Of a DNA stretch of 64,000 nt, positions 3,001 to 44,770 are shown in pieces; the stretch's first letter is position 1; each line of letters begins with the position of its first letter. The stretch is from Oikopleura dioica (Eukaryota > Animalia > Chordata), in assembly GCA_907165135.1 (NCBI GenBank), contig OU015566.1, positions 5,704,001 to 5,768,000 of the forward strand. The letters run 5' to 3'. The notes beneath the pieces were generated by a model. That model was not told the origin of the DNA, did not search any database, and saw only the letters and a program-made list of their open reading frames with translations. The position numbers and the translations under genes were made by a program.

Positions 3001-4190
3001 AGGCGACACAACTGGACGATCCAGCGGAGTATGAGACGAAAATTTCAGTCCACATGGACGGAACTTGCAACGGATTCCAGCACTACTCTGCCATGGGAAG
3101 AGATACTATCGGCGCTATCTTCACAAATGTTCTTCCAACTGAGCGGCCTTCTGACTTCTACCACTCGATTCTCGAATCAGCGCTGAAGCTGATGGATGAA
3201 GATATTGCCGCCGAAGGAGCAAACTTCGAAAAGCTTCGAATCGCGAAAATCGCCCGCAAAGTCGTCAACCGTTCAATTGTCAAGAGACCTGTCATGGCTA
3301 TTCCGTACGGCTTATCTGTCAGAGGCGCCGTCGACATTTGCAGAAACAATCTTCACGGGAAAATTTCCACTGCCGATTTGACCCCCGTGGCGCAGTATAT
3401 CATCAGGAACTTGTTCAGTTCGATCAATCAGACGTTCCGAAACTCGATGGCGATCAAGCAGTGGCTCGCTGGGTACAATCGATTTTGCTCCTCGAAACTC
3501 GGAGTTCCGATTGAGTACATTTCGCCGATGGGATTTCCTGGTGAGCTTTAATTTTTCTTTTCCAAGTTTTACCTGGCGATTTCAGTGTCGCAGATTGGAT
3601 ACAAAAGTATGCTGCAAAGAAAGACCTCGATGGAAGTACTGATAGCTGCTGTAGACGAGAATAGAATAAAGAACGAAAGGGATAATTGCTACGGAGTGTT
3701 TCCCGCGGCAGATGGTCAACGATCCGGAAACTCGCTCTCGCCGAACTTTGTTCATGCGATTGATGCGAGTCATTTGCTCATGAGTTACACTATGTTTGCT
3801 AAAGGTAGAGCGCTCTTTCATGTCCTCTTTTGATAACTTTTTTTAGCTGCGAAAGAAGAAAGAGGGACGGAAGCAGATTTCGGATCAATCCACGACTCGT
3901 TTTGGTGCCACCCTTCTCAAGTAGATCTATTGAATGAAAACCTCCGCGAAGCGTTCATCGACATGTATGAAAATTTCGACCCTATCACGACTTTTGCTGA
4001 ACACATGGAGAACTGGGTGATTCCGGAACGTCTGTGGCCGAAGCGATTCGATAATTTGCCGGAAAGTGTAACGACGCTGGAGAATAAGCTGTCGCATCTG
4101 GAAAGAAGAGAAACGCTGTTTCATAACCGGCCGGAGAAAGGAGATATGGATATACAAAAAGTCAGAGATTCAAAGTATTTCTTCTGCTGA
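1..4190 (+). CDS. POLRMT: Mitochondrial single-subunit (T7-like) RNA polymerase, multi-exon; 5' end at or before the window start
   Basis: Motifs DYRGRIYP, MDGTCNGFQHYSAMGRD, RSIVKRPVMAIPYG, SPNFVHAIDASHL, IHDSFWCHP and terminal KYFFC. ORFs 602-1936, 2094-3551, 3585-3833 and 3930-4190 join through phase-compatible GT-AG introns (e.g. 1933-2008, 3541-3585). Confidence 0.95.
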
Positions 4191-25010: not shown

Positions 25011-26794
25011 ATGTATGGATCCAAATCGTCGTTGAGTTCCTTTCAGTCGAGCAAATTCGGCGATGACTCGGACGAAGAAGATAATTCTGAAATCAATCGA
25101 CACGGATTCAAGGTCGTTTTCTTCCTTGATTTCAACTTGTAAAAGGGCTTTCATTCAGGTGAAAAATGGCGAAATCGAAGACGGACTACATGTTTCTATC
25201 GAAAAGAACCGAGAGCGCGAGAGCAAGTGGCTACTCATGCTGGCCAATTGGCACTTGTACTCGAAGTCGAAAAAGTATCAGTCGAAACTGAAGAATCGAG
25301 TCCGCAAGGGAATTCCTGATGCTATTCGAGGAAAAGCCTGGATGTTCCTGAGGTACTTCAATTTCACCTTCTCGCTTCTCAACATTTCTAGTGGCGGAGA
25401 AGTCTTAAAAAGAGCATCGCAAGAAGGAAAGCTCCAGGACCAGACGACGTTTCAAATGCTCGACGAAAAGAGCTGCTCAGCGGAAGAAGAAGAGCAAATC
25501 GAAAAAGATCTGCACCGTCAATTCCCCGATCATGAAATGTTCTCGACAAAGGGAAGCGGCAAGCAGGATCTCTACCGGGTTCTCAAAGCGTGGGCAGTCT
25601 ACCGCCCGAATGTCGGCTACTGTCAAGGCCAAGCGCCCATCGCTAGTTTATTATTAATGCATCTGACAGGTAAGCTTATCAATGAACAACCGCGTGCATA
25701 ATTAAAATCATCGACAGCGGAGGACGCCTTCTGGAGTCTTGTGGCTATTTGCGACTATTTCATTCCCGGCTACTACGACGTTGGATTGACAGCTATTCAA
25801 ATGGACGGGCTAATTCTCGAGTCGCTTACGAGCTCATACTGCAGGTTTGTAAAAGGTCGTGTATTCTTTTGAATGATTTATTTGTCCAGCGATGTCCACA
25901 AGCTTCTGAAAGCAACAAAAGTCGAATCGATGTATTATATGACTGACTGGTTCATGTGCATATTTATACGAACGCTTCCCTGGAACACTGTGCTCCGCGT
26001 TTTCGACTTGTTCTTGTCTGAAGGAGTTAAAGTAAGGACATTCTTTTGAACCAAATTTTTATCGATTTTAGGTGCTTTTCCGTGTTGGCTTGACAATGTT
26101 GAGGGAAAACCTATCGACGCTATCGAAAAAACTCAAGAAAAATAACGCAGATGACTTGTTCATGGACGCAATGACTGTAATTAGAAATCATTAAGGAACT
26201 CCAATAAACTCACTTTCGTGTAGTTCGCAAAACGCTCTCCAGAAGCAGCAAAGAACGAGGACAACTTCATTCGCCAAGTTTGCTCCTGTCGAGTAACGGA
26301 ACGAGAGCTGACGAATGAGTTTCAGAGGCAGATGAAAAAATGGGACAGAACGAAAGGAGTACGCTCTTTATTCACTTATTCGAGAATTCATTGCCTTTTA
26401 GGACGTGAGAAGGAATTACTACAAGAGGGATCCCGAAAGCATCAGCGATGTAAAAATGCCATACACAAACGGAAAAATGTCGAAAACGATCAATCCAATC
26501 AGCGCTGATGCTTCAAATGTCACTGCTGCTCGTGAGAATTCAACCATTTTGTCCTCAATATTAACCTTCTTCAAAGAAAGACTAAAGACAGTTCCCGAAG
26601 CTCCCGAAGCACAAGAAGAAGACACGATTTCGCCGACCGACGAGCGCTGGAAAGGCGTCGACAGCAGCAACTACGACCCAAACGCGACGATCAAGCCATT
26701 GCCGCCGCTGAAAACGACTCCGCAGAAAATAGCGAAACCGCCGAGGTCGATTTCCGCGCCTGAGCGATTTCCGGACACTGAGACGAAACTGTGA
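25011..26794 (+). CDS. TBC1D10: Rab-GAP TBC domain protein, TBC1D10 family
   Basis: RESKW, RKGIPDAIRGKAW, IEKDLHRQFP.HEMF, GYCQGQAPIASLLLMH and DWFMCIFIRTLPW. Confidence 0.88.
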
Positions 26795-27324: not shown

Positions 27325-29258
27325 ATGCCTTTTGGAGACAACGAGAAACCATTTGTGCATCAATGCCAGGGCGGCTATAATTTAAAAAGCAGACACTTCA
27401 AGTTCTTTCTCAAAGACATTCACTCGACAAGTAAAAAGCAGGCTTTTCTCAGGTCATTTAAAAAATCTCTCAGCGCTAGATCGGATGCCGCAGAACAACA
27501 AGCACGTGGACAACTACGAAAGAACATACAAAGTTCCAGTCATTTGCATGTTCGGCGAAACGCCCGACGATCACTCTGTAATGGTCTTTGTCCACAACTA
27601 CTTTCCCTATTTCTACATTGCAACGAATCCGCATGTGCTCGAAAGAGACATGAACGCAGTCCTCGAGCTTTTGAAAAACGACGCGCGACTCATGCACGGT
27701 TCCAAAAATCGCTTTTCTGAAATCATGAAAGACTCGCTTTTGAACCAGCTAAAAAGAGTACGAGGCGAATTTCTTGGAAAATTGAAGCCATTTTGGCGGA
27801 CTCCGTTTTACGGCTACACTACTGAAAAAAGATTGTACATCAAAATAACCTACACGAAGCCGTACTTGCACGATGCAATAAGAGGAGTGTTGGAGGAAAA
27901 GTTCAAGGTTCAAAATGGATTTTACAATTATGTGAATCAGTTTTACTCAGGCACAGGTTTCTGAGTCATCCTTCTTCAAAAATAGTCCCTAACCTTAACC
28001 CTAACCTTAACCCTAACCCTATTCTTATTCAAATGCAGTAACCTAAAAAGACCACAATGTCGCCTTGAACAAATCCGTTTACCTAAATCGCTTCCGCTAC
28101 GACGAGCGCCCGAAAGCGGAGTTCAACGGGATCGACTTTCTGACCGGCCTCCCCAGAGTGCAGCCAGGCTCGCGCCCGACAAGCTGCGACTACGAGCTGC
28201 ACTGCTCTTCCGACGACATTTTCAACAAAAAGCTTCTCCCGCATTTCGTGGAGCACGTGTACGTGGACCCGCGCTGCGACCATCCAGCTCTGCACATTCA
28301 CTGGCTCAACAGGAAAAATCAAGATCCGGAAAATCCAGTTATTGAGTACGACGACTTCGATTCTGATTCCGAGGCGCTGCTGGAAAGAGATCCGAACAGG
28401 TCACAAATTGACTTGGACGCGAGCCAGATTTTACGGGTCGTGGCGGATCTGGAATCCAGAGGAATTCGAGTCGATATGCAAGCGCTCGCAAAAAAGAACG
28501 AGGAAGAAGGAATCAAGGAAGAGCCCGAAAATGGCGCTAAAGAGTCGCCGAAGAGTCCAAATCCGATTCTTGACGAGCGAAAATCGCCAGAAGTTCTCTT
28601 GAGCTCAGATGAAGAAGGTAATTCTCAACCCTTATTCGCGGCTGGAGAAAATGACCTTCTGAGCCAGTCAATTTACCTCCCCGATTCTGAAAATGAAGAA
28701 GACAAAAAGAAACCAGTTCCTAGCGATTTGGATCGAGAGAGACGAAAGAGCCAATATCCGGAAACAGGGATTGATAGTCTTAGAATCGCGAGTCAGCGGA
28801 AAATAAGCGAGTCTGAAGAAGATGGCTCGATTGCTGAAAACTGGGACTCGGAAGGCGACGATTTCTGGGAAGAAGAACTTGAATCGAACGATTCGGAGAG
28901 GCTTATTGGCGACTTGAGCAAGAAAGACGGCGAAGAGAAGTCCAATGATTCCGTAAAGATTATTGGCGAAGAAAAGAAAGAAGAAGAGGAAGAGACCGGA
29001 CCGAGTTGTTCATTTTCTTCAAGAAGAAAACATTTAAAAATCGTGGAAGAAAAGCCAAAAAGAGCGGCATTTCTGGAATCCTCGGTAAATATCTTCGGAA
29101 TGAGAATTAACACGCGAAAAATTAAGAGCGACGAAGATTCAGCTGAAAGTAATCACTCCGATGATCTTTTTGCGAGAGACTCAGATTCAAGCTCGAAGAA
29201 TTCGTGCGAAGACGATTTCAACGAAAGTTTCGACGAAGAATACTATGAGACGTTATGA
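27325..29258 (+). CDS. REV3L: DNA polymerase zeta catalytic subunit, N-terminal region only (no polymerase domain)
   Basis: KVPVICMFGETP..SVMVFVHNYFPYFY, FYGY..EKRLYIKI, TSCDYELHCSSDDIFNK and HPALHIHWLNRK, followed by an acidic tail, a stop and AATAAA. Confidence 0.72.
27987..28021. repeat. Interstitial telomere-like repeat (CCCTAA/CCTTAA)
   Basis: ccctaaccttaaccctaaccttaaccctaacccta, lying between REV3L exons. Confidence 0.8.
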
Positions 29259-29410
29259 GCTTTGTTTTGCATATTTCACTGCCGAAGTCCAAATTTTTAC
29301 AGGTCAACATTGAATAAATATTTTATTTAAGAAATAAACGCTGTTCAAAATTCTGCTTATAGAATAAATAAATAAATGTAACGAGTAGACCGAAATATGA
29401 AAAGTCGGAA

Positions 29411-32400
29411 TCAAGGCAAATATAAGGGACCAGTAGTGATTGTAGGAAGGTACTCGTCGATTGATCTTCGTTTTCTTCCGCTGGAACAGTCGATGACGCA
29501 ATTTTCAACGCTAGAAGCAAAGTTTGGAAAGAACTCGTCTTGATTGTTACCTTGAGTCACAGACGTTAACATCGCAGTGAAGGAAAAGTGTTGACGCGTC
29601 AAGGAATTTGAAGGAGTTCATTCTGAATCTCGCAAAGTTCTCTTCGCCGTTTTCGAAGATTTCCAAAGTGTCGCCGGCGATTTCGTCATTGTTGCCGCAG
29701 AAGTTGTCGATGAATGAATAGGAGAGTGTATCTTGAGGATTGTCGCTGAAATTCATATTTTTTACGAATAAGAGTGTTCAAGTACGTTGAGGTGGCCCAG
29801 CAGCGGTTGAGTTGAAGTTTGAAATTGTCGCCAGCTGATTCTAGCGCAGTTTTGACGAAGAAAGGCTGCGGGACTGAGATGGTTTCGTTCACCGCGAAAT
29901 GATCGCTTTAATGCTTTTCAAAACGGCTCCATCGCTGATAATAAAAAATAGTTTTGAGAAACATTCCTGAAACCGTCGTCTTTGAATAGGTCAATGCTCA
30001 AGTCGAAGTTGCCGGTCGTTTCGCTCAAGTCCACGGTGAAATGATAGAGCGAGGTCAAAATCGGGCCCGAGTTGACTCGGATCAGTCGCTCGAAAGCGCA
30101 CGCCAAGTCGACTTTCAGCCTTCTTTGGCGAGTGATTCCCGCGTAATTGACGCCGGCGACGCCTTGAATCGAGCTCTTGATGATGATGTGCGTCGCGTTG
30201 GAGACGATTTCGTTTCCGCACTCGGCGACTTTTCCCTGCTGCCCGAAGTGGTACTCGTCGTTGATTAATGTTCCGCTGCAAGCGCTGTTTACTGCTCCGC
30301 CGCTCACTGCATTTGGTCCGCTCAACGAGGCAGCAGATGGATCCATATTCAAATGGTCGAAGACGCATTTGTGGATGGAAATGCCGAAATGATCGGGGCG
30401 GCATTTTGTCGAGGTCTTAGCGGAACAGTTTAAAATTGCGATCGAGAAGGAAATACTTCTTACTTGAAGACTTATGTCACCGGAATCACAAGGAGTGCTT
30501 CCTGCGGATGAAGTAGTTGGTGTTATGCTCGTTGAAGTTGTAGTAGTTGTGGTGTTTGCTAGAAAATTTATTCTGATTCACAAAATTCTTTATTTGCGTG
30601 AATCTTTTTTCCTATCCTGCGCAAAAAGCTCACTGTACCCGGTTTTTTGGAATGCCGAGCGTTTGGACATTTGTTCGATTTTACTCCGATAGATAAATAC
30701 TTGTTTATATAGTTTCGATAGGTTCATTTAATACTTACATGTGGTGGTTGTAGTCGTTGTTGTCGTTGTAGTTGTCGTGGTAGTTGTTGTTGCTAAAAGA
30801 TTGATTCTACGTTACTTTACCCGTTTTTTTTCCTTGAAAAAGAATGCACATAGGCATTTTGATATTTGTTTGATTATAACCAAAGAATAAATTTTATCTT
30901 TATATAATTATAATATTCACTCTCTACTTACGTTCAGGTCGAACAACAAATGTATCTGAGTGTGCTTTCCCGACCAGAACTGTATCTTCTCCTTGATTGT
31001 AGCAGAGGCTGAAGATCAGGGTGACAGCGGAGTGTTCGACCGTCGGCACGATATCGTTGAAAATCGCTCTTCCGCCGATATAGGCAACTTCCAAAGTTCC
31101 AGTGAGGGTTTCGTTTTGGTAAACTGGCGCTTCAACACAAACTCTGCACTCGTCGCCAGCTGGTCCACAGGAGCTCATGTACTCGCCATTTGTGTCGAAG
31201 ATTTGGATGCTTATTTCTGGCAGCGGCTGAAGCACGTAGTTGATTGTGACGTTGTCTGTGTACTCGATCTGTACCGAGCCTAAAGAGGGATTTGGTAAGG
31301 AGATCTTTTTACGCGAGTTTACCGGGTGGAGCAGCGATCACTTCGAAAGGCGCAGAAGTGATTTCAGGCATAGTGAAATTCGACTCAGTGCCGGAATATG
31401 AAAGCTCGGCGGTCAATTGATAAGAGCCGAGAGAGTGAATTCGGAGTCCACTGAAATCAGCAACGCCAGATCCTTAACAAAAAGTAATTTACTTGATATC
31501 TTTACTATTGTTTTACCAGGAGTAAATGCGACTTCTAGTGCGTCGATGTATTCTCCATTCGCTTCGCTAATGAGAACCCTCCATGGATCTCCGCTGTATC
31601 CGACATTTTCCATCTGGGCGCCATCTTTATCAAGCATAACGACCTAAGATTTAGTAATCAATCTATTTTCGACAAGAAAAAAATACCTTGAATCCTTGCT
31701 TGGGACGCTGACTGACGATCATATTGCCTGGTTCTTGAAGAATCGAGAACGTTGTTGGAATTTGATCGTAAACCTTTGCTTCAGTCGTCTTGGACATGAT
31801 TTCTTCTTGAGCCGCCTGTTTATCGATCGTTGTCTCGGAAATAAGGTCTTCTTTGCCAGCTTCGGCCGCTTTAGCTTCCACCATTGCCTGCAAGTTTTCT
31901 GCCTTTCTTCAAGATTGAAAATCATTTGTTGCAAAGATTAACCTCTGAAACATGATTTTTTCTTTTTCAAATCTTTCCTGGTTAGCTTCATCATCCGTAA
32001 TTCCGAGATCCTTGAGAATGGTGACATCCTCGCCCATTGTTCCTGGCTCGTACCAATCAGGGACATCTCCTTCGACAGCTTCGCCCGTCAATGTCGTCGC
32101 AACAACCTCTAACTCGGTTCCCTGCGCATCCGCCATATCCTTGATGCTCGTCTCCAACTCGCCGTCCATTTGCTTCTGAACGAGAATGCTTCCAATTTTG
32201 TCGAAGTCTGGATCACCGACGCTTCTTCGTTTTCTTGAAGAGTTGACGATTCCAAGAGGCTTTCCGAACTCGAATGAAACTTTCATGTTGATGCTGTTCT
32301 TTAATTGAGGCTTTGTCACCATTGTTGCTTCTGTCCAGCTCTTTTGAGCACTTGTCCAGTTTTCTTTCTTGACATCGACGACCTTAACTTGGCTAGGATC

Positions 32401-35400
32401 GAGTCCGAGAAGTGCTGCTAGAAGGTAGGGCAGATCAGGAGAAGCATAGAACTCATTGACTGTCATTGATGTCGCCACATCGAGCGTTAAAATGATCGAT
32501 TTTGCAATTTTTACTCGGAGTTTATCGCCTCCGCCAAGAACGAAATAGAGCATCTGGTCAGCACGGTCAAAGTAGTTACTGCCAGAGCTATCGGTAACAT
32601 CAGGAATGAACGCTGGACTCGGGAATTTCCAGTTGTGCGTGGCGAAGTCGTATTGATTTGAGTAGATCATGTTGTTGCCGTTGAGGAAAACATCTTGTCG
32701 ATTTTGACGATGAGTGAACATCTGGATTTTCACTTTACAGTCACTTTTAAATGGGTTAAATTTCTATTTTCTCGCCGAAGATTTCAAAATAGGGCTTTGA
32801 TTAAAAATTCATTTACCCCTTCCTTGGAACATTGTACATCGCGAACTGGACTTCTGTAGGAGTCGTTCCCGTTGCATGGAAATCGTAAGTTTCGCCGCAC
32901 TCAACAATAAAATGGTTCATTGTCGCACGGAGCGAGCAAGAGTACCCAGCACAGCATGAATTATCGTTGAGTCCGTTTGAGAGATCGATGTAACCAGTTG
33001 AAGATCGCAAACCGATTGGCGAGATTCGTCGTATTTCCGTGTCTTTGTCGAAGGATTCGAAGATCAAGTGCGCTCGTGTACTTCCGACGCAGTGATAAGC
33101 GGCGTGTGATTCTTTCCAGACGCAAGTGTCTCCTCTAGAAATGCCCTTGTGAGGCGCATAATCATCGATGGAGATGACTGTTCCATTCGTAAAGGTCAGC
33201 ATGCTCTCAGGAACTCGATAATCGCCCATGCCGTAGGAGTCATCGACGCTGTTTGACCAAGGGAACCCTTGAACTCCGCGCCAATGGAATTCGGACTGCG
33301 AAAAGATGGATGTCTCGACGCCGTTGCCAGTGAATGATCCGTCCATGTCCTTCACCAAAAGCTTCTTTTGCCCATCGCATGGCATGTCGATACAATCGGC
33401 AAGATTGACATTTTCCAGCAGTGGCCGCTTGAACTCGACGAGATGATCAGCGTGGCAGTTAGTCAAGCTTGAACCCGAAATGTCAACCGAATGAGTGACA
33501 TCTTGAGCGCGCGGGTTCGACATTACAATCACATTTCCTCTGCCGCATGTTGCATCCATAGAGTATTCCTTGAACAGATTGTTCGCGACGCAACTGTATC
33601 CGGTTGGTGATGGATAGTTGTCTTCCTTTGATCGAATGAGGAAGTTCTTTGGATAGTTATTGTAGTCAGCGACAAAGATAGGCATCATAATAGCAGTATG
33701 GCCAAAATGCTTGTTTGCCGGCGCTCTTGCCATTGTATTTCGACCGCCAGTCAAGGTGAGATAGTTTTCAAGGTTCTCCCAATCCTTGCAAGTGTGGTGG
33801 TCCGAAAGACCGATGAACTCGTTGTTGTCGATTGAGCAGCGAAGGTCACCGTGCCAGTGATCTAGAGGGCCTCCATTGCCAATCATCAAGTGGCCTACTC
33901 CAACGGTGCAATCAACGAATCTGTTGCCAAGTATGTGAATGTTTGCTTTGAATGCTTGCGTGTAGATGCCGTAGTCTGCGATTCGCCAGAACTCGAAGCC
34001 TTCTAGTAGAATACAAGGTCTGTTGTATTGAGGCTTGAGAATCGAATAGCCGAAACTCACCGAGTGAGCGTAATTGGTAATGTTCATTGTCCAGCTATCA
34101 CTCGTGCAGAGATCAGAATGCTGACAAGGAAGCCCTCGGCCCACGTAGCCAGGACCATCACCTCCGGCGACGCGATTGTTGTGGAGAAGTCCGGAAAAGC
34201 TGTTGATACCAAAGCCAGGGCCGGAGGCTCCAGCCTGGTTAATTCCGCTGAAAGAAGCACCAAGGAAGGCCTGTGCGTACGTCATTTGGCTGACAATCAT
34301 GACGGCTACATTGTTTGTTACAACTGAATCATCAGCCTGTACCGAGAATCCACTGCCAACAACGTTGAAGATTACATTTCTATCGATAACAAAGCTGTCA
34401 ACTTCTTCGCCAATATTAATTGCGCCCATGTAAGACGAGTGGATGGATGAACCTTTGAAGTAGGAAGGATTCTGGAGAGTTGATTGATCTCCCTTGTTGT
34501 AGAAAACGATAGGTCCTCTCCAGTCGTCGCCACGGTTATGACCATATTGACCCATGTAGACGAGCTCAATGTTTTCTAGTTGCGCCCATCCTCGTCGGTA
34601 AGAATCACCATCGTCCGCTTCAATAACTACAATTCTTCCACCAAACATATCTTCCGAGTCTCTACTCCCGTCAAGACGGATATTACGTGTCAGGTGGACT
34701 ACCTCAGTCTTGAAAGTTTCACCGACATCGGCTCCGCTATGATCAAAGTCGAGTGGCCTGTCGACAGTGACTGTGTTTCCAGCGATAGACACAATCTTGA
34801 GGGCGTCAAAATCACGCGGGTTGTAGGAAGACGCGGCAATGACAATTTCATCGCCAACTTTCCAATCTCCGCTTACGTCGTCCGTGAGCTCAATAGTATT
34901 TACGCCAGCGACGACAGAGTTTTGCAAAAAGGACAACGGTGTGTTCTGCGGGCATCCAACAAGACGTAAGCCACCCATAACACCAATCGTTTTGGCTCCG
35001 ATCGGATGGGATCCATGCGGAGCACCGAATTCTTCTTGCCATCGATCACCCTTGAAATTGATCTTGAAGGTATGACTACAGTTGAAAGGTTGGTCGGTAG
35101 TTCCGGCGAACAGATTTCCATTTTCAAATTGGACGGATCTTCGTTTTCGTCTTTCCCAAAGATGTTCATGGCCGCCAGCTCCTGTGTTGATTAGGATGTC
35201 TCTGATATCGAGAGTGATGTCTTGAGCATCTGAAATAGTGAGTGTTCCTTCCAGGAAGAGAATGTCGCCATCAAAATCACTGTTCAACGTAACATGCTTT
35301 TCAAGAGGAATAGTGACATTCGATCCGGGTGCAGGGACGACTCCATCTTCCCAGCAAAGCGGATCTTCCCAGTCGCATTCGTTGAGGTCGGTTGGCGGTG

Positions 35401-38400
35401 TCGTTGGCGGTGGAGTTGTCGGTGGCGTGCAATCGGGCCAGAAGCATTTGAAAACTTCGAAGTTGTAGTCAACATCGTAATAAATATTTTCAGCGTCGGT
35501 TTTTGCGAACATGATCGAGAAATCAAGAGTATGCTGGTCAATCATATAAGCTAGAGGTCCCATTGACACGTCAAGCGATGTTTCTTCTCGGCCGGCGTAC
35601 GATTCCCATTTCCAATCAGCGAAGCCTTTTTGTTTGAATCCGTCAATTTCAGCATAGTCGACCTCCTGCGTGAAAGGATGGCGAACAATCGCGTGCTTGT
35701 GCTGTCCAACATCGTAAACTGTTCCCCGATATGTAATATTTGTGATGTGCAGGAAGTCTTTCCAGAAAACATCGTGAGTTTCTCCTGCGAGAAGGATACC
35801 CATCCAACCAGTTGGATGTGTCGATCGACTGGTTTGAAAGGGGATAGTTGTGGATCCGTATTTATTCTCAATGTCCAGATTCAAGCCCTGGAGTGCGCTT
35901 GGTAGTACATTATTCATGCCATAGCGCATGAACTCGATTCCTTGACAGAAAGAACATGGAAATTTGACCGAAAACTCAGGCGCAGGTTCACACATCGAGG
36001 TCGGGTAGAGGCTTGATGTCGGTACTACTGACCAGCCAGCCATGCCTTTTCCAGTCAAAGAGCCATCTCGGTCGACAAGAACGGTTTCGTGCTCCCAGTC
36101 AGCCGAAAACTTTCTTGGAGAGTTAAACCACTGAATTCGCTCGAAATGACTAGTTCGACCGCAATCAAAGGGGTAAGAATGGTAGCAAGCGTCAATGGCG
36201 GTGCAGTGGCTTCCGTTTCCTTGATCGAAGTTGTGGAACTTGACACCTTCAATGGCGCACATTGCGTCTGGCTCCCACGGTGTTTCAATGCCGAAACGAG
36301 TGCACAGCGATAGCTCAGGGATGTTCTTATCAATGTATCCAATGACAGTCGAATCCTTGATGCCGGTAGCGTACTGAGTGTACTCTCCTCCGTAACGCCC
36401 GGAAATAGTTTCAAGGATCGACAAGCCGCCAAGAATATTGTTCGCTGCAATAAAGTCCTTCATCCAAATGTTATCTGCTACTCGGGCAAGTTCAGCACCT
36501 CTGAGACAGTTCCAGAAAATTCCTCTTTCAAAGGTAGCTTCTCCAGGAGGCCAGGTCGTCTGACAATCCTGTGTGCTTGGTCGATAGGCTGAGTTTGGAA
36601 TCATCGTCATCACCCAGAAGCCATAAAAGCCCATATCGTGGGCAGTGTTATTGTACCATTTGAGGACACCCCTGTTGACTGGACAGAGTGTATCTTTGTA
36701 GCCTGGCTGAACTCCTCTGTGAGGGAAGGCGTGTTCAAATGGATTAACCCAGTATCCAGTTTGAGCACCTCCTGCGGCTCGATTATGTTGAATGATATTC
36801 CAGGGATTGGTAATCCAAAAAGCAGCAGCTTTTTGATCAGTGTTTAGAAGCGAGTTCGACGGTTTTGTTTTGATAGCCAAATTGTACTGGATTATGTTGT
36901 TCTCTTCGCAGCCATCTTCAATGAAAAAGTTGTGGCCCATAGCATTGTAACCGACGTTCCATTCAACCAGAGCCTGATGAACTCCATGAGTTGTGATGAC
37001 GCGATTGAAAGTGTTGTAGACCGCGTTTCCTTTGAAATAAGAGTCGGGTTGGTGGCTTGATCTGTGGAAATGGAACGAGTATCGGGCAAACTGGGCTGCT
37101 TGTCCCATGTGGAAAGATTCAATGTGCGCGATTTTTCCCCACGTGATTTTGTGCATCAAGAAATGACCGCCAAACTCATCGGAGCCGATTTCATCACCCC
37201 ATTTATTCTCGTAACAGCTTTGGATAACTTCGTCTTCTTTCTGGTTTTCTCCAGTCTCATACTCCGTGTCGCAGGGTGGAAGTGTTTTTGTCCATTCATC
37301 ATTAACGTTTCCATACAGCTTGACGTTTCTTGTCAGAAGACCAACTTCGGCTGCAACTTCTAAGATTTCCCCATCCCATTCAGAGTAATGATAAAGATGT
37401 CGGTATGTTAGAGGCTCCGTCAAAAAGATAGTTCGTCCATCACTCGAGATCGAGTCAATGATTCTTTCTTCGCTTTGAGTAAGAGTTAGCCGCCCGCCAG
37501 TAGTTGCAATGACAATTTTATCGCCAGGTTTCCATGAGTTCATCGGAGCATCAGGATTTGTTACCGGATTGCGCACGAAGATGGAATTATCTCCTGCTTC
37601 TGCCGTTGCGTTTAACTGTGTCCAAGTTGTCTCGATTGGGCAACCGTGAAGACTGACAGTTCCGTCGCGAGTGATAAAACACTTGGCGCCGTAGATCGGA
37701 AGTCGAATGCTTCGGTGGTGGCCATAGAGCTCGATTTCCGCACCAATTGGATCTGACGGTGTTCCGCAGAAAGGCTCATATTCGTTTCCAAGTTCAAAGT
37801 GGCCTCCATCAGTGATTAAAATGTACTCGGCTCGGAGTTTAATGGCATCTTTGCGATCCCAGACGAGAGTACCGCCTTGGATGAGGAGAACTTTCAAAAG
37901 TGGAGTAGACTCGTCGAGCAAAACAGTCTGATTGTGGGGAATGACTGCAATATCTCCATCGACAGGTTTGCCAGTGCAGTTCACAGCGGCGTCACATCCC
38001 CAGGTGAATGGAGAGCTCCATCTGTCAACGTACCAGAATTTCGCGGCATCTGGGTGATGGAAAACAGCATTGCCATCAGGCACAGTCACATGAACCAAAT
38101 GAGCCGTCGAGTATTGATGAGCTTGTGTCTCGCAGACAATTTCTGTCACGCTTTCAGAAAGGATAACACACGAAACTCCGTCGATTTCAACAGTTGTTTG
38201 TCCGGGTACAAAGTTGTTTCCAGCGATAGTAATTCTTGTTCCACCTTGGGTGCCTCCCATGTTCGGGTGAATGCTGTCGATGTACGCAGTGGTTGAATTG
38301 TCAAAGACAAAGCTCTGACCCGCGTTGCGTCGTTTTCTAACGCCCTCTTCGACAGATTCATCATCGTTATGATACCACTCGTACACGCAATCTGTTGAGC

Positions 38401-41400
38401 TTTCCCACACCCAATTTTCAATCATGGGCGTTTTACAAATTGCTTCTGTGTGATCGTTGTTAATTTGACAGTCGACGAGCTCCTCACCGCAGAGCGTTCC
38501 CATGTTGTTGTCGTAAAATCCGCTTCCAGTGATGGTTATGAGTTTTCCGCCACCATACGATCCAATATTCGGGTTTACATTGTTAACTTTGAAACCCATT
38601 TCGAAGACAGAACTTTCGTGAATAGCACTACCAATGCTGTCGAAGTTGATATCCAGTTTATACTCACCAGCTTCTTGACCAGGAACTGTGCAAGAAAGGA
38701 AAGCATTCGTGCCATCGCAGTCGACTATTGGGCAGTCTTTGTCGCCGATGGAAATTGTCACGCCACTGCAGCCGTTTGGAAGACTGTCGAGTCCAAAGGT
38801 GACCTCTTCATTGGCAAGGTATTTGTTCGACCAAGTTGGCTCGCTTGACTCGCTCTGCTGAGTGATAGCAATGTTCGTTTGAGTATCAAATTCGTATTCG
38901 CAGACACCAGGGGCACATGATATTTTTTGGTTACTGAAAACGATGGTGGCTTTTCCGTCGAAATCTTCAGTTACAGAATTAAAAGCTGCAGGAGTAATAA
39001 TTTCGATTTTTGTTGAGCTGATTGCAGTGATTTTACAAGCTTTTGGATCATAATTTTGGCCACAAATATCGTCTTCTCCGACATAGAAATAGATCTCTCC
39101 AGTTGGAATCTGCAAGAAATTCTCACTCGTCGTGAAACGAAGTCGATGTCCGCCACCCATTGATCCCTTCTTTACAGCGTTGTCGAAAGATTGGATCTCA
39201 AGCTCGAGATGGAATTGTCCGACGTTGACGTATCCATAATTGTCAAGATACAAACGAACCTCGTAATCGTCAAAATTTGGATTAGGAAGATTCAAAGAGA
39301 AATGGCAAGTAGGACCAGAACAAGAGTGCGTAACGGTCATCGAGAGCCAATTGTTATTGTTATCTTCTCCTGCAGCACTCACTAATCGACACTCTGCTTC
39401 CGCCAAAGCGGGATGACCGAGAAGAGAAAGATCGAAATCGACAGTAAAAGCACTTTGAACCGATGGAGGACCTGCAACGTTAGCGATATCATTAGTTGGA
39501 TCAACAGCGGTATAAGTTTGTCCAGCAAATGCTGCGGTGAAGCCATAATCGCCAGTGTCAGCGCAAAGTTTAATATCGTCTGCATTGTACTCATCAAAAT
39601 CAGTCTCGCAATAGTAGACTGCGATTGCTGTTGGAACTCCAAGAGAATCGGTGTTTGACAATTTGCAGAGAATTTCCGTGGCGCTTACGGAAATTACATT
39701 ATCACAAACACTGACAGCCATTTTTGCAACTGGGAACTTATCGTATGCGAAATATTCGCCTGTGATCGTCAAAATGCCGCCTCCTTGATTTGAACCCTCG
39801 GCCGGATAGATGCCAGAGCATGTCGGGGAAAAGGTCTTTTGAAGTGCAGTCAAGCTTCCGTCGATCTGGGCCAACCCTCGCCCGAATTGATTTACGTGTA
39901 AATAGACTTTCTCATTGATGGGCCAATTATCAGTTGTCTGTCCGATATTAGCTACAAGCTCTCCAAAAGAGCTTATCGATGAGATCATAAAAGGAATCTT
40001 TGCATCCGGATTCGTTTTCGTCACAGCGTAGACTTCATACTGATCGAGGCAGTCTTTGTTGTCGGCGAGCCCTGAAGCGGTGAGCTGAACGGTATTGCCG
40101 CTCCAGGAACCACTCGTTACAATCGGACTTCGAGCAAAGGAGAATGTGTGTGTCAGACAGCCAGTGCAGTTCGCGGAAATCGTCGAGGACGGAAGTTGAG
40201 TTGAGATATCAGTGTCGATTGGGCCACAGTTTTTCTGTGTGTTCCATTTATTTTTCCAACCGGTCCATTTTTTGACCTGATTTTTGATAGCAGAAAAACC
40301 ATTAACCACGACTTCAACTTGGACCTCTCTGTCAACGGGATCGTTGATTTCAATAGTTCCTCCTGGTGTTACTGTTCCAAGATCATCAACAGGTCCGGTT
40401 GTAAAGGAATAGACTCCAGGTGCTTCATCAAAAACTCGATAAATCTCACCACTTGACGAGCTTTGTGGTGGATAAGAGAATTCTCCTGCAGGAACAGATT
40501 CTAGCGCAACGTTAATTGTGCTTTCGAGCTGCCATCTAAACACGATCTTGTCGTTTTGATTGATGACAAAGTCGGATGGTGACCATCCTGTTCCGATAAA
40601 ATTTGCTACATGAGTAGTGTAAGTTGCATGTGTCAAGCATACAATTTTCTTGTTCGTTTGCGAGACGATGTCGCAGTTTTGGCCACCAATTGTGACTTGA
40701 GTAATTGTCGAATCTACACCAAAACCTTCTCCATCAATTGTCAAAAGAGATCCACCTGCCATCGAGGACGATGTCGGGGCAATTGTATTGATACTGAGGA
40801 TTGTTTCTACGGTGATCGAGTCTGAGTATCCGAACTCTCCGATAAGTGCTCGGAACTGATGTGCTCCTGGTGCTCTCGCTTCAATGAAGAAACCATAAGT
40901 ACTTCCATTCACAATCGCAGTGTGGACTTCGTCATCCTCAATGAAGAAAGTGACTGTTTCATTGAGAATATCTCGATCAAACGTCACCGTTACATCGTTT
41001 CCCTCAACACTGAGTGAGGATACATCAAGTGTGACGACATTTGCAGCGGCGTCATAAACATATGTCCCGAGGGGCTCCACATCGCCATCAAAGAAGATAC
41101 TAACGGATGCGCCGAGACCATCGAAATTTTCAGGTGATCTCACAATCACGTCATCGACAGATCTGCCGACTACTTCCACGATGGTATCCCCGAAGGCGAT
41201 GTCACCTTGAGCTAGGCCAAATCCGTCACCGCTGATTGTTACTAATGTACCACCATTGACGTTTCTGCCATCGGGGCCAACGGTCACACTGACACTTGTT
41301 GAAGAAGAGACAGTTACTTCAAGAGCAGTTGTGTACTCAGCGAAACCTGAAATAAAAATGACGTTTATGTCAGAAAAATTAAAAAAATTAGATCTTAGCT

Positions 41401-44400
41401 CAGATTAATTTTGCATTATGGGTTTTTTCCTGTTAGACCGCAAGCTGAATTAATTTATGATTTTTAAAATGTCAAATTCTTTGATTTCCTGAAAAGTTAA
41501 CCTGATTCGGAAAGAACGTAGACAGCGCTTGACCCCCATGGAAGTTTTGTATATGAAACTTCAACAGAAGAAGAAGTTGCTGATTTGATCGTGCAGAAGA
41601 CCGTGTCAAAAGTACAAGAGGTATCGCCAAACATGACCGCAACTGTACTTCCAAGATCGCTTCCAAAGATTTTTATTGTCTGCTCCTGCCCGTCGAGAAT
41701 GATGTTGTTCGTGCCAAGTGAAGTTGCAGCTCCGCTATCGATAAATGCGAAGTCGCAATTGTCGCAAGAAGCCGGAACGTTTTTGATGAAAAGTTGGACC
41801 TAAAAATTTTCACCTGAGCTGGAAGCTTTTCAATTTTAAATTCACCTGAGGAGAAGACATTTCTTTTGTCAAAGCAGAGCCGGGAATTTTCCTAACTCTC
41901 ACGCCAGCATCATTTGTTCGCCAAGCCAAATCATTCCCGTGATTTGACATGTCATCACTTGTGATCATGATTTCCGGGAAATCCCCGAGAATCTGGAATT
42001 TGACAATGAAGAAAACACCGTGGCCACAATCTTTTCGGAAAACTTCCAAAATGCAGCCAAAAAAGTCTGGATGTCCCGATTGCAATATCGTCAAGAGATC
42101 ATCTTGCAGAATAGTTTCAGAATCAATCACTGGCGAAATCCACGTTTTGTAATGAAGTTGGAAGGATCCTTTCATTCCTGGGACGATCTGTTGATTCTCC
42201 CATGTGTCGATGATAATTGTATCGCCATTCTCAGTCATTGATGTTCGAAGACCAGTGACTTGCTCTCCAAAGGCGTTAGTAAATTGCATCGAGGTTGGTT
42301 CCGCAGCAAATTCACTGACAACTTCAATCGGTGCGAGAGTATTGGCACAGTTTGCGCCATTGAAAGTGACGGTGATTCTAGCGTCTCCATGCGAGCTACT
42401 GACATCGACGGAGTAAATATCGGCTCCGAATTTGAAATCATCAGAGAACCAACTATTCAGAAGAGCCGCTCCATTGTTCACAAGATCGCTCCAAGTCATC
42501 GGCTCCGTTGTTCGAGAAGACCATCCTCCAGTCAAGCGGAGTCGGAACTGCACGCTGCTTGAAACGGAGCCAGTTGAAAGGTGAATTATGTGTTTGGTCT
42601 TTTCGGCGAAAATCGGCCAGACGTGAATTTGTTGCCGCTCATATTGGTCCTCAAGCTTATGCCCGGAGGGTTGAATTATCTTATACGGTGGAATAGCCGA
42701 CTCAAGTGTAGCGGGGCTCCCATCGCCATGAAAAATGTAACCGTATGATTTTGCTTCGATTGTGTAGAAGCCGTACTGGTAATCGGCATCGAGATGAACT
42801 CTTTCTCCCCAGGAACGGATGTAGTTTCCGTCCTTGTTCAGATCGTAATGGAGACCGTGGTCGATACTGTAATAACCAGTCACGGGGACTCGGAAGAAAC
42901 CTCGCATCGTCCCAGTCTCTGATTGAAGATGATACTTTGTCTTCATAATTCCATCTTCAAAAATATCATTGGCTCCAAGACCGCCAGGAAATCGGGTTTC
43001 TTCAGGGTCAATATTCACTACTGATCGATCGACTTGACAAATGATTTCTTCGGAGGTCGAGGACAGGACTGAACAAGGGATATTTCCTGCGAGAATGATT
43101 TTTGGGGGAGAATTTGCTTTTAGCTTGAGATTTGTTCCAGTGATGGTGATGAGTGTTCCGCCAAATTTTGAGCCTTCGTTGGGCGAAATTGCGTCAATTC
43201 GTGGAGCGAGTGCAAAGTTGGCAGTTTTGCCCTCAGCTGTGAAGTAAAGGGACGTCTCATCGACTCCTCTACCCTTTTTCAAATGAATTGGGGAGATAGT
43301 ATAATCTCCGACGGTTTTCGCCTCTACGCGGCAGGTAAGTGCGCCATTCCATCGGTCTTTACTGTAGATCGAGTACAAATGATGAACCTCATCTTCGTCC
43401 GTGTATCCAAGGCCACAAACAGCGACCTCCTGTGGATTTGGGAAGTCGGTTTCTATCTTAACCGCCATCATATGGTTTTCACGCTCATCCACGTCAAAAG
43501 CGGCGTGATCGTTTTGGTCGCGATCGCCAGCGAGATACATGAAAACAGAACTGTCGTCGCAGAGAAATCGGAACTCGTAATCATCGCAGCCGCCTGATGG
43601 GCAGATGATCATGGAGGCCTGTGAGTGCTCGAAGAGATTTTCCATGTCTTCTTCGTTGAGAAGAGTTCCATCTTTGAATCGAACAGAGAAGCTGATGGGA
43701 GCGGGGCAGCCGAAAGTGGAAGTGAGGAAACGATCCTCGAAAATGATTTCTTCTTCTTCTGTCGTGCCACTCAGCGATGCCCACGGTGTCCACGCTGGAG
43801 ATTTTCCGGGAGCGACCGCGTTGCCATATTTCAAGTCGTACTTGACAGATGCTCTGCCCCAGTGATGAGGGCGAGTGTGGATGATACAGTCCCCGCACGT
43901 AGCCTCTAATTTTTCGCCGTTGAGGTAGACGAGAGTTGCCCATTCCGCCTCGCGATTAAATGGAGCAGCTTGGCAAGCAATCTCGCCTGGATTATACCAA
44001 TGCGTGATCAGCTCACAGGGAACGTAAGTGAGCCCGTTTGCGAAGAAGACCTGGATATCACTGTCGAATAGGTTAATACAATGATCGAAGGAGTCAACTA
44101 TTTTGCGCTAAAGGACTGTAATGGAAATTTTAGCTTTGTATTAGTCTCTTATTTCCGTAATAACCCTGACTGTTAGACATTCGCCCCTCTTCGCCAAACG
44201 AAGTCAGTGATTCTCCAAAATTTTCGCCTGAGATGGTAAAGATCGCACCACCTCTGGTTCCCACCGCATTCGGAATTACTTTCGTCACCATCGGTGTTTC
44301 GTCTCCGACGGCTTCTACCCGCTCATAAGAATTCGTGTCAGTTGATGGACTATCGTCGATTTTGATGATGCATGAATCAGCTCTTGCACAGGTAAACAGA

Positions 44401-44770
44401 GTCGAACCAGCGTCATTTTGGGCGAGAACGCTTATGTCGTACCGATCAAAGCCAGCATTCAAAGGAAGGCCGCATTCTACATTGTTGTCGGTGATTGATT
44501 TGATCTTGCAATCATATGTTAATCCTCCAGCGCTAAAATTCAATTTGACGCTGTGTTTTACTTATTTTTGATTTCTTATTTTTACAATTGAAAATTGAAT
44601 AATGATTAAACCTACTTTGCTCGCACGGAAACAACGTCAACATCTCGGAAGTCTCCACCAACGATGACAGAAGCTTTTTCATCATCAGCAAATCTTGTCT
44701 TCGCAAAATGGAGACGCGTTTCCTGGCCAAGCACCCCCACAAGGAGGAGCAAGGCCCTCAGAAAAGCCAT
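29411..44770 (-). CDS. PKHD1L1: Fibrocystin-L (PKHD1L1)-like giant protein with C-terminal Thr-rich stalk and ZP module, about 4700 aa by my estimate
   Basis: Signal peptide MAFLRALLLLVGVLG, many IPT/TIG repeats, two G8 domains (WSSPFTWG..; WEDPLCW..) and PbH1 repeats. All 3' junctions from 32.8 kb to 29.4 kb are phase-compatible into the Thr-rich exons, ZP-N and ZP-C. Confidence 0.9.

What the first reader, a model, noticed from the sequence alone, without database searches (positions are those of the whole stretch)
29411..44770. Fibrocystin-L fused to a ZP module with no membrane anchor: a candidate secreted giant matrix polymer
Seen: the PKHD1L1-like frame does not end in a TM helix. It continues through phase-compatible splices (31950>31906, 31322>31280, 30935>30792, 30738>30559, then into 30417) into two poly-Thr exons, ZP-N (CGNEIVSN...VDLAC) and ZP-C (LNRCWAT...FLHCDVNVC), and ends SSGRKRRSIDEYLPTITTGPLYLP*. 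Known: vertebrate fibrocystin/fibrocystin-L are type I membrane proteins, and ZP modules polymerise after furin cleavage removes an external hydrophobic patch (GPL-like). Inference: a roughly 4700-aa soluble precursor that could form filaments decorated with IPT/G8/beta-helix arrays, plausibly in an extracellular structure such as the larvacean house or egg coat. I do not know this architecture from elsewhere.
Basis: partly seen in the sequence, partly recalled or inferred. Interest (0 to 1): 0.9.

Follow-up and report, generated by a model that had tools for sequence, protein, structure and literature searches.

The report
Secreted fibrocystin-like giant ending in ZP module
A larvacean (Oikopleura-type) gene appears to encode a 4,751-residue secreted relative of the kidney and ear protein fibrocystin-L, with the usual membrane anchor replaced by a mucin stalk and a filament-forming zona-pellucida module. 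This domain combination was not found elsewhere, although anchor-less fibrocystin-like "house" proteins are already known in this animal group.

Summary
On the minus strand a 16-exon open frame runs from ATG 44770 to the stop at 29411-29413 and encodes 4,751 aa. It contains a signal peptide, a TIG array, two G8/beta-helix units and two Ig-like domains. These are followed by a poly-Thr stalk, ZP-N and ZP-C (both above Pfam thresholds), an RKRR furin site, a GP-type hydrophobic patch and the stop. No transmembrane helix is present, whereas the same test finds one in eight vertebrate, ascidian, amphioxus and echinoderm controls.

Evidence for the fusion is genomic only:
- The ZP exons are under purifying selection (dN/dS 0.23).
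- They have no start codon or signal peptide of their own.
- Relatives switch to other C-terminal modules at exactly the same domain boundary.

No RNA confirms the key join between exon 10 and exon 11. The reads I laid gave no usable coverage.

Two points temper the novelty. A fibrocystin-like house protein that probably lacks an anchor (oik14) and a ZP house protein (oik20) were published in 2012. Close stand-alone ZP relatives also lack an anchor. None of 120 listed homologues carries a ZP domain.

This scan's first readers flagged two more fibrocystin+ZP genes on the same chromosome (unchecked). New here: four RKRR sites (0.006 expected) suggest multi-site furin processing.

The parts
44616..44770 (-). 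Exon 1: ATG at 44770 and signal peptide MAFLRALLLLVGVLGQ.
   Evidence: Homologous to the N-terminus of O. dioica P0001.
44171..44532 (-). Exon 2 (aa 52-172), first TIG-like region.
   Evidence: Splice pair chosen by best alignment to P0001.
41846..44097 (-). Exon 3 (aa 173-923), N-terminal array with a TIG domain.
   Evidence: Pfam TIG E 1.4e-12. tblastn to P0001 gives 62% identity.
41502..41799 (-). Exon 4 (aa 924-1022).
32817..41346 (-). Exon 5, the giant exon (aa 1023-3865). It holds the TIG repeats, G8 + beta-helix unit 1 and G8 + beta-helix unit 2. Inserted RKRR motifs lie at aa 2026 and 3088.
   Evidence: Pfam. 33% identity with E = 0 to fibrocystin-L of many animals. RKRR insertions shown.
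31943..32743 (-). Exon 6 (aa 3866-4132). It contains SRKRRS at aa 4036, the position where the O. dioica LRR-ended relative P0080 has RRRR.
31687..31906 (-). Exon 7 (aa 4133-4206), preceded by a 36-nt GT-AG intron.
   Evidence: Homology to P0001 continues across it.
31517..31643 (-). Exon 8 (aa 4207-4248), first half of an Ig-like domain.
31323..31472 (-). Exon 9 (aa 4249-4298), second half of that Ig-like domain.
30932..31279 (-). Exon 10 (aa 4299-4414), the last fibrocystin-like Ig-like domain, ending ...DTFVVRPE. If the following intron were retained, the frame would stop after two more codons (RK*).
   Evidence: Homology to P0001, P0002, L001 and L008 ends exactly here.
30739..30792 (-). 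Exon 11: 54 nt encoding 18 Thr (mucin-like stalk). Its length is a multiple of three, so it could be skipped without changing the frame.
   Evidence: GTAAGT donor and TTTTAG acceptor.
30464..30558 (-). Exon 12: Thr/Ser-rich stalk ending PCDSGDISLQ.
   Evidence: Conserved in frame in L003, with a 6-nt indel. Contiguous in frame with ZP-N in L004, and present as a poly-Thr exon upstream of ZP-N in L010.
29967..30415 (-). Exon 13: ZP-N, the interdomain linker and the first strand of ZP-C.
   Evidence: Pfam PF23344 E 1.3e-9. dN/dS 0.23 against L003.
29906..29966 (-). Non-canonical GA-AG intron, 61 nt.
   Evidence: The same CAG|GAATGT donor is present in L003 and L004. The intron-less homologues L005 and L010 read straight through the predicted junction.
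29786..29905 (-). Exon 14: ZP-C part 1 (...LNRCWATS).
   Evidence: PF00100, profile positions 27-59.
29551..29745 (-). Exon 15: ZP-C part 2 (...FLHCDVNVCDS).
   Evidence: PF00100 E 2e-12, profile positions 62-125.
29411..29510 (-). Exon 16: the last Cys pair (ENCVIDC), the consensus furin site RKRR (29465-29476), the external hydrophobic patch LPTITTGPLYLP (29414-29449) and the stop TGA (29411-29413).
   Evidence: Aligns column for column with anchor-less stand-alone ZP proteins.
29322..29327 (-). AATAAA polyadenylation signal, 84 nt after the stop codon.
30567..30594 (-). Two AATAAA hexamers inside the 180-nt intron 11. They could serve as an alternative 3' end for a ZP-less isoform.
   Evidence: This is inference only.

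Best explanation
This is one gene (minus strand, 44770 to 29411, 16 exons). It encodes a 4,751-aa secreted precursor.

**Domain order**
- Signal peptide.
- The full fibrocystin-L-type ectodomain: TIG array, two G8 + parallel beta-helix units and two membrane-proximal Ig-like domains.
- In place of the ancestral transmembrane helix and tail, a roughly 50-residue O-glycosylatable Thr/Ser stalk.
- A complete uromodulin-type ZP module (ZP-N, linker, ZP-C).
- A furin site (RKRR), an external hydrophobic patch, and the stop.

**Inferred mechanism**
- The precursor travels the secretory pathway with the patch blocking ZP-C.
- A furin-type convertase cuts at RKRR 4731-4734 and releases the last 17 residues.
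- The ZP modules then assemble head to tail into filaments, as shown for uromodulin.
- The filament core carries the mucin stalk and fibrocystin-like domains as side arms.

Three additional RKRR motifs (aa 2026, 3088, 4036) are insertions absent from the closest relatives. They make it likely that the same protease also nicks the ectodomain. The arms may therefore be held non-covalently or be partly shed.

The most likely destination is the larvacean house. Fibrocystin-like and ZP oikosins are already known there.

**Shown:** the sequence features, their conservation, and the absence of an anchor.
**Inferred:** the exon 10 to 11 splice, the cleavage, the polymerisation and the tissue.
For: - **Open frame.** It runs through 15 introns with no stops. 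Fourteen are GT-AG and one is a conserved GA-AG. The two introns flanking the first Thr exon have the strongest donors in the gene (GTAAGT).
- **Domains.** Pfam finds TIG, G8 and CEMIP_beta-hel plus ZP-N and ZP-C above their cut-offs.
- **No transmembrane helix.** It is absent here and present in all eight non-larvacean controls.
- **The ZP exons are functional coding DNA.**
  - dN/dS is 0.23 against a relative that is 94% identical at nucleotide level.
  - The intron between them is much less conserved.
  - The Thr exon carries an in-frame 6-nt indel.
- **The ZP part cannot be a secreted protein on its own.**
  - There is no in-frame ATG before residue 24 of the ZP-N exon.
  - No ATG-led hydrophobic ORF lies between 30932 and 30415.
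  - True stand-alone relatives have their own signal peptides.
- **Homologues never start at ZP-N.** In L004 the stalk and ZP-N lie in one ORF with further upstream domains. In L010 a poly-Thr exon in the matching splice phase lies just upstream of ZP-N.
- **Relatives switch module at the same boundary.** Each does so right after the F-x-V strand that ends exon 10.
  - O. dioica P0001/P0002 and L008 continue into an unknown Cys-rich domain of about 330 aa. In L008 that domain begins within the same ORF as the boundary.
  - L001 continues into five or more calcium-binding EGF domains within the same ORF.
- **Polyadenylation.** A canonical AATAAA follows the ZP stop codon.
- **RKRR count.** Four observed, 0.006 expected from composition. 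Three are insertions relative to P0001 and P0002.
- **Literature.**
  - oik14 is fibrocystin-like, probably lacks a transmembrane region and is expressed in giant Fol cells; oik20 has a ZP domain (PMC3390340).
  - Four of eight O. dioica fibrocystin homologues are preferentially expressed in the house-making epithelium (bioRxiv 10.64898/2026.03.31.715263).
Against: - **No RNA evidence.** Three bulk oligo-dT runs and one single-cell run with the species label gave zero depth over 29150-33350, apart from cross-mapping on the Thr repeat. No indexed RNA run holds the stretch.
- **Weak frame argument.** Frame compatibility at the decisive exon 10 to 11 join has about a one in three chance on its own.
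- **Possible early termination.** Intron 11 holds two AATAAA hexamers and intron 10 starts with an in-frame stop. A ZP-less transcript is therefore feasible.
- **The ZP module also occurs in another context.** The homologue in L004 sits behind a different, non-fibrocystin N-terminal region. This type of ZP cassette is evidently mobile between genes.
- **No public protein model.** No database protein of 90% identity or more was found for this gene. No public model supports or contradicts the fusion.
- **Untested steps.** Polymerisation, cleavage and house localisation are all untested for this protein.
Confidence: 0.68

Rival explanations
1. The locus makes mainly or only a ZP-less protein. Transcripts end by polyadenylation inside intron 10 or intron 11, giving ...VVRPERK* or ...TTTTCKY*. 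The ZP exons would then be used only in a minor alternative isoform.
For: An in-frame stop lies six bases into intron 10. Two AATAAA hexamers lie in intron 11. Introns 10 and 11 are 139 and 180 nt, three to four times longer than most other introns of the gene. No RNA proves the splice.
Against: The ZP-N exon is under purifying selection (dN/dS 0.23) and has no other route to translation and secretion. Every relative carries some C-terminal module after this boundary. Both introns have strong GTAAGT donors and pyrimidine-rich acceptors. AATAAA also occurs by chance five times inside exons of this gene.
Confidence: 0.2
2. Two independent genes lie head to tail. A separate mucin-ZP gene starts downstream of 30.9 kb, with its own promoter or spliced-leader acceptor.
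For: O. dioica has operons and trans-splicing (general knowledge). A TATATAAA-like box followed by an ATG (MPMCILFQGKKT) lies in intron 10, in a phase compatible with the Thr exon. The ZP cassette occurs behind a non-fibrocystin N-terminal region in L004.
Against: The only candidate first exon encodes 12-13 residues and has no credible signal peptide. It would also need a 28-nt intron. No other ATG-led ORF in 30415-30932 is hydrophobic. Genuine stand-alone relatives have clear signal peptides. A ZP protein without one could not be secreted.
Confidence: 0.07
3. The ZP end is a decaying remnant, or a mis-assembly joins two unrelated regions.
For: One intron lacks GT. No public protein model exists.
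Against: The GA-AG intron is conserved at the same codon in two other loci. Its junction is confirmed by intron-less homologues. All ZP cysteines, the furin site and the hydrophobic patch are intact. Two DNA runs hold 100% of the sampled words across 30300-31400, though they may be the source sample. L003, an independent metagenome contig, shows the same arrangement of exon 12, intron and exon 13.
Confidence: 0.03

Closest known systems
Oikosin 14 (oik14) of Oikopleura dioica, a fibrocystin/polyductin-like house protein (Hosp et al. 2012, PMC3390340)
   Same: It comes from a larvacean and has overall fibrocystin similarity with IPT/TIG, G8 and PbH1 domains. It has a signal peptide, and its transmembrane region is predicted absent. 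It is a secreted matrix (house) component made by giant Fol cells.
   Different: No ZP module is reported for oik14. I could not tell which paralogue oik14 is: its published probe primers match neither the window nor the O. dioica locus L002. The closest O. dioica proteins I could read (P0001, P0002; 66-70% identity) end in an unknown Cys-rich domain instead of stalk + ZP.
Vertebrate fibrocystin-L (PKHD1L1) and fibrocystin (PKHD1)
   Same: The ectodomain plan matches: signal peptide, TIG array, and two G8 + beta-helix units. Identity is 33% over about 73% of the giant exon with E = 0. A proprotein-convertase-type basic site (SRKRRS, aa 4036) lies in the membrane-proximal region; the O. dioica relative P0080 has RRRR at the aligned position.
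   Different: Those proteins are type I membrane proteins with a C-terminal helix, detected in every control. This one has none, carries a mucin stalk and ZP module instead, and gave no PA14 hit.
Uromodulin / GP2 type ZP proteins
   Same: It has ZP-N and ZP-C with the UMOD-type extra cysteines, a consensus furin-type cleavage site and an external hydrophobic patch with the G-P motif. Its stand-alone larvacean relative P0124 matches uromodulin structures at E 1.5e-35. P0124 aligns with the window module along its whole length.
   Different: Uromodulin and GP2 are GPI-anchored and are cut at the membrane. This protein and its larvacean ZP relatives stop a few residues after the patch, with no anchor.
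Alpha-tectorin and other giant matrix proteins with a C-terminal ZP module
   Same: The design principle is the same: a large adhesive or structural ectodomain is delivered into an extracellular gel by a C-terminal ZP polymerisation module. An alpha-tectorin-like protein (NIDO, VWD x4, ZP) appeared among the ZP-N hits (P0156).
   Different: The cargo domains are unrelated (VWD/NIDO versus TIG/G8/beta-helix). Alpha-tectorin is GPI-anchored.

Membership tests
Fibrocystin-L (PKHD1L1) family | Multiple IPT/TIG domains in the ectodomain | tested here: met
   PF01833 E 4.6e-43 with 4 stretches in the giant exon, plus one in exon 3.
Fibrocystin-L (PKHD1L1) family | Two G8 domains, each followed by a parallel beta-helix region | tested here: met
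   PF10162 x2 (E 2.4e-41) and PF24606 x2 (E 9.7e-50).
Fibrocystin-L (PKHD1L1) family | Full-length sequence similarity to named fibrocystin-L proteins | tested here: met
   More than 100 named fibrocystin-L proteins hit at E = 0 to 1e-186, with about 30-34% identity over about 70% of the giant exon.
Fibrocystin-L (PKHD1L1) family | Single C-terminal transmembrane helix with a short cytoplasmic tail (type I membrane protein) | tested here: not met
   The maximum 19-residue hydropathy is 1.39 and lies nowhere near the C-terminus. Controls scored 1.88-4.05 at their C-terminal helix.
Fibrocystin-L (PKHD1L1) family | PA14 domain in the N-terminal half | tested here: not met
   No PF07691 hit in exons 3 or 5 at E <= 0.01. 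Many but not all homologues list it.
ZP-module proteins | ZP-N domain | tested here: met
   PF23344 E 1.3e-9, 38.7 bits against a 24.7 cut-off, profile positions 1-100 of 101.
ZP-module proteins | ZP-C domain | tested here: met
   PF00100, profile 27-59 and 62-125 on two consecutive exons, E 2e-12 for the larger one.
ZP-module proteins | Conserved cysteine framework (C1-C4 in ZP-N; C5-C8 plus Ca and Cb in ZP-C) | tested here: met
   All Cys columns are shared with the stand-alone ZP proteins P0124, P0127, P0128 and P0136 in the alignment. P0124 in turn matches uromodulin structures.
ZP-module proteins | Consensus furin cleavage site followed by an external hydrophobic patch | tested here: met
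   RKRR at aa 4731-4734, then LPTITTGPLYLP. It aligns with the RRRR ... xVGPxxV ends of relatives. Actual cleavage was not tested.
ZP-module proteins | C-terminal membrane anchor (transmembrane helix or GPI), as in mammalian polymerising ZP proteins | tested here: not met
   The protein stops directly after the patch, as do its larvacean relatives. A GPI signal would need a hydrophobic tail, and none is present.
ZP-module proteins | Polymerisation into filaments | not testable with these tools
   Needs expression, cleavage and electron microscopy.
Oikosins (larvacean house proteins) | Detected in the house proteome and expressed in a defined field of the oikoplastic epithelium | not testable with these tools
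   RNA runs gave no usable coverage. Only paralogues have published support.

The most novel reading that the evidence does not exclude
Larvaceans turned the ectodomain of a ciliary or stereociliary membrane protein into a family of secreted building blocks by swapping the anchor for interchangeable assembly modules: ZP here, and calcium-binding EGF, LRR or an unknown Cys-rich domain in relatives. The ZP-ended member would be a furin-processed polyprotein that self-assembles, without any membrane tether, into filaments displaying G8/beta-helix arms in the food-filtering house. That would be a natural example of membrane-independent ZP polymerisation carrying a very large cargo.
Probability: 0.35. 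Interest if true: 0.75.

Novelty: new variant of a known kind. Interest (0 to 1): 0.6.

Why it matters
If the fused transcript is real, it shows a fibrocystin-type ectodomain acting as a structural matrix element. The molecular role of that ectodomain is still unclear in polycystic kidney disease (PKHD1) and in the hair-cell stereocilia coat (PKHD1L1).

It also shows domain shuffling at a single boundary generating a family of house components in a fast-evolving chordate.

It offers a test of two open points in ZP biology:
- whether polymerisation needs a membrane anchor;
- how large a cargo a ZP filament can carry.

The four inserted RKRR sites suggest a polyprotein-like maturation that could be tested directly.

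For genome annotation, it flags a giant gene with a conserved GA-AG intron that standard predictors would truncate.

Tried and rejected
- **RNA support.** I laid three bulk oligo-dT runs and one single-cell run on 29150-33350 at 90% likeness or more. Depth was zero everywhere except 30701-30841, the Thr repeat. There the reads were 90-95% alike and ran on into unrelated sequence, so they come from other mucin-like transcripts. This is uninformative.
- **A canonical GT-AG join between ZP-N and ZP-C.** Every GT or GC donor gave a product lacking conserved strands. I rejected these in favour of the GA-AG intron.
- **The same fusion in relatives.**
  - O. dioica locus L002 and contigs L001, L008 and L009 have no ZP exons downstream.
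  - Contigs L011 and L012 end too soon.
  - The metagenome scan returned only two short stand-alone ZP loci.
  - L010 is too short upstream to decide.
- **Synteny** between the window flanks and the O. dioica P0001 locus: none.
- **Identifying the genome's own annotation through neighbours.** The kinase-like ORF is not on record. The REV3L-like and INTS1 exons gave only environmental relatives at 38% and 82%. Lineage and public gene model remain unknown to me.
- **Matching oik14 and oik20 probe primers** to the window and L002: no convincing match.
- **PDB search with the ZP-N exon alone:** only marginal hits. I used the full-length relative P0124 instead.
Full report
**1. What is in the sequence**

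The minus strand between 44770 and 29411 carries a very large gene.

- A single open reading frame of 2,824 aa (32813-41287) dominates it. Pfam finds four TIG stretches, two G8 domains and two CEMIP-type beta-helix regions there. It finds another TIG in the 674-aa frame upstream.
- I used the closest database protein (O. dioica P0001) as a guide and enumerated GT-AG pairs. This gave five 5' exons starting at ATG 44770, which opens with a typical signal peptide, MAFLRALLLLVGVLGQ.
- Downstream of the giant exon the frame continues through short introns of 36-73 nt into five more exons homologous to P0001.
- It then passes through two longer introns (139 and 180 nt, both with GTAAGT donors) into a 54-nt exon of 18 Thr codons and a 95-nt Thr/Ser exon ending PCDSGDISLQ.
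- The next exon, 30415-29967, is a ZP-N domain (PF23344, E 1.3e-9, full-length match).
- The following two exons cover ZP-C (PF00100, profile positions 27-59 and 62-125, E 2e-12).
- The last exon supplies ENCVIDC, the furin consensus RKRR, the patch LPTITTGPLYLP and the stop codon. An AATAAA lies 84 nt further on.
- The complete model has 16 exons and 4,751 aa.

**2. The one non-canonical intron**

No GT or GC donor joins ZP-N to ZP-C without deleting conserved strands.

A GA-AG intron (29966-29906, donor CAG|GAATGT) gives ...FKDDGF-S-DHFAVNETISVPQPFFV...

- The same donor sits at the same codon in two independent contigs, L003 and L004.
- Two intron-less homologues (L005, L010) read FKDDTFSTHITADEVISIPEP straight through the predicted junction.
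- In the alignment with L003, conservation drops within about 15 nt downstream of the proposed donor.

Non-canonical introns are a known peculiarity of Oikopleura (general knowledge).

**3. No membrane anchor**

The highest 19-residue hydropathy mean in the protein is 1.39, in internal beta-rich regions.

The same script finds a C-terminal helix scoring 1.88-4.05 in fibrocystin-L of two frogs, two mammals, a sea star, two ascidians and amphioxus.

The three O. dioica fibrocystin-like proteins I could read (P0001, P0002, P0080) also lack one.

**4. Is the ZP part really joined to the fibrocystin-like part?**

RNA could not answer this.

- Four runs with the species label gave zero depth over 4.2 kb, apart from spurious matches on the Thr repeat.
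- No indexed RNA run holds the stretch.

The case therefore rests on DNA.

(a) *The ZP-N exon is under purifying selection.* Against L003 (94% nucleotide identity), dS is 0.159, dN is 0.037 and the ratio is 0.23. The intron between exons 12 and 13 is much more diverged, and the Thr exon differs by an in-frame 6-nt indel.

(b) *The ZP exons cannot make a secreted protein alone.*
- The first in-frame ATG lies 24 codons into ZP-N, past its first conserved cysteine.
- None of the ATG-led frames between 30932 and 30415 is a signal peptide.
- Genuine stand-alone relatives of about 320 aa have clear signal peptides.

(c) *The Thr stalk plus PCDSGDISLQ belongs with this ZP type.* In L004 it lies in the same reading frame as ZP-N. 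In L010 and L003 it forms the exon just upstream of ZP-N, in the matching splice phase. The coding region therefore extends upstream at least to the Thr exons.

(d) *Every relative carries a module after the same boundary,* the F-x-V strand that ends exon 10.
- An unknown Cys-rich domain of about 330 aa follows in O. dioica P0001/P0002 and in L008. In L008 it begins within the same ORF as the boundary.
- Five or more calcium-binding EGF domains follow within the same ORF in L001.

In the window, the only thing that can follow is the stalk and ZP module.

(e) *Splice signals are strong,* and the only AATAAA downstream of the last exon follows the ZP stop codon.

Against this:
- The decisive exon 10 to 11 phase match has about a one in three chance by itself.
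- Intron 10 begins with an in-frame stop.
- Intron 11 holds two AATAAA hexamers, so a ZP-less isoform is conceivable.

I put the fused reading at about 0.7.

**5. What it is related to**

- The giant exon hits over a hundred named fibrocystin-L proteins at E = 0 with about 33% identity. None of the 120 listed carries PF00100 or PF23344.
- The best hits are two O. dioica proteins at 66% (Okinawa assembly) and 70% (Norwegian). They are 92% identical to each other over a 1,657-residue aligned block.
- The window gene is therefore a paralogue of them or an orthologue in a different species. No protein of 90% identity or more exists in the database within the searchable length range.
- Flanking genes show no synteny with that O. 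dioica locus.
- Earlier follow-ups of this scan call the genome Okinawa O. dioica. I could not confirm the lineage.
- The ZP module aligns over its whole length with environmental and O. dioica stand-alone ZP proteins. One cluster contains CBY40357.1 from O. dioica.
- Those proteins end the same way: basic site, G-P patch, stop, no anchor.
- One of them, P0124, matches uromodulin and GP2 structures at E 1e-35 to 1e-30.
- A homologous stalk + ZP cassette (70% identity) sits behind a quite different N-terminal region in L004. The cassette has evidently moved between genes.

**6. What the literature already has**

Hosp et al. 2012 (PMC3390340) identified 80 house proteins of O. dioica.
- oik14 is fibrocystin/polyductin-like with IPT/TIG, G8 and PbH1 domains and a signal peptide. 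Its transmembrane probability is very low. It is expressed in giant Fol cells.
- oik20, from the same cells, has a ZP domain, which the authors proposed stabilises the food-concentrating filter.

A 2026 preprint (10.64898/2026.03.31.715263) counts eight fibrocystin homologues in O. dioica, four preferentially expressed in the house-making epithelium.

No paper in the library combines fibrocystin and a ZP domain in one protein.

The anchor-less secreted fibrocystin idea is therefore known. The ZP ending is the new element.

First readers of this scan independently flagged related genes. I could not check any of these loci directly.
- Two further fibrocystin-L + ZP genes on the same chromosome: s1-363075 and s1-319413.
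- An LRR-ended one (s1-326507). I saw weak, sub-threshold LRR hits at the C-terminus of O. dioica P0080.
- A cbEGF-ended one (s1-354958). L001 has the same arrangement.

**7.

The exact motif RKRR occurs four times: aa 2026, 3088, 4036 and 4731. Composition predicts 0.006.

- The first three are short insertions (4-9 residues) absent from P0001, P0002, L001 and L008.
- The one at 4036 aligns with an RRRR in the O. dioica LRR-ended relative P0080.
- A fifth basic site, RQRR at 4560, lies inside ZP-N and is conserved in relatives as part of the fold.

The likely meaning is that a furin-type convertase releases the C-terminal patch and also nicks the ectodomain. The site at 3088 lies inside the second G8 domain, so the pieces there could stay together.

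This qualifies the picture of filaments carrying the entire array.

**8. Mechanism and verdict**

The most likely reading is a secreted precursor. Furin activates its C-terminal uromodulin-type ZP module for head-to-tail polymerisation. The resulting filaments carry a glycosylated stalk and fibrocystin-like arms, probably in the larvacean house.

| Step | Status |
|---|---|
| Domain content | Shown |
| Intactness and selection | Shown |
| Absence of an anchor | Shown |
| Boundary-specific module swapping among relatives | Shown |
| The key splice (exon 10 to 11) | Inferred |
| Cleavage | Inferred |
| Polymerisation | Inferred |
| Tissue | Inferred |

It is a new variant of a known kind and of moderate to good interest. 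It is directly testable with one RT-PCR.

Noticed in passing
window aa 2026, 3088, 4036, 4731 of the model (DNA within 32817-41346, 31943-32743 and 29465-29476): Four exact RKRR motifs where 0.006 are expected. Three are small insertions relative to the closest O. dioica proteins, suggesting multi-site convertase processing of the precursor.
   Followed up: partly
P0001/P0002 C-termini; L008:18560-19818: The closest O. dioica relatives and an environmental larvacean contig end in a conserved Cys-rich domain of about 330 aa (VLNRCVGNNTYDEDL ... DFRxMVxYIR) with no Pfam match. It is an unassigned module occupying the place of the ZP module.
   Followed up: partly
L001:13345-16461: In a more distant larvacean-like contig, the same membrane-proximal Ig-like region runs on within one ORF into five or more calcium-binding EGF domains. 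This is a third kind of C-terminal ending for this family.
   Followed up: partly
P0080 (O. dioica XSR.g14489) C-terminus: This other O. dioica fibrocystin-L homologue also lacks a transmembrane helix. It shows weak, sub-threshold LRR matches at its C-terminus.
   Followed up: partly
L004:1-2919: A 70%-identical stalk + ZP cassette follows a long poly-Thr tract, a PAN/Apple-like Cys motif and a region with its own SRKRRQS site. It does not follow fibrocystin-like exons. This is evidence that the cassette shuffles between genes.
   Followed up: partly
window 30793-30931 (intron 10, minus strand): A TATATAAA-like box lies about 45 nt upstream of an ATG (MPMCILFQGKKT). That ATG could splice in phase to the Thr exon through a 28-nt intron. 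It is probably chance, but it is the only candidate internal start.
   Followed up: partly
window 30701-30841: RNA reads from all four runs pile up on the ACN-repeat Thr exon at 90-95% likeness and continue into unrelated sequence. They evidently come from other abundant mucin-like transcripts, so this is a mapping trap for this locus.
   Followed up: yes
window 15624-21110 (+), 13895-15459 (+), 2094-3551 (+), 25063-25701 (+): Neighbouring genes by Pfam are Integrator subunit 1, an RBPJ/Su(H)-type LAG1 DNA-binding protein, a mitochondrial-type single-subunit RNA polymerase and a TBC RabGAP. The nearest database relative of the INTS1 exon is only 82% identical.
   Followed up: partly
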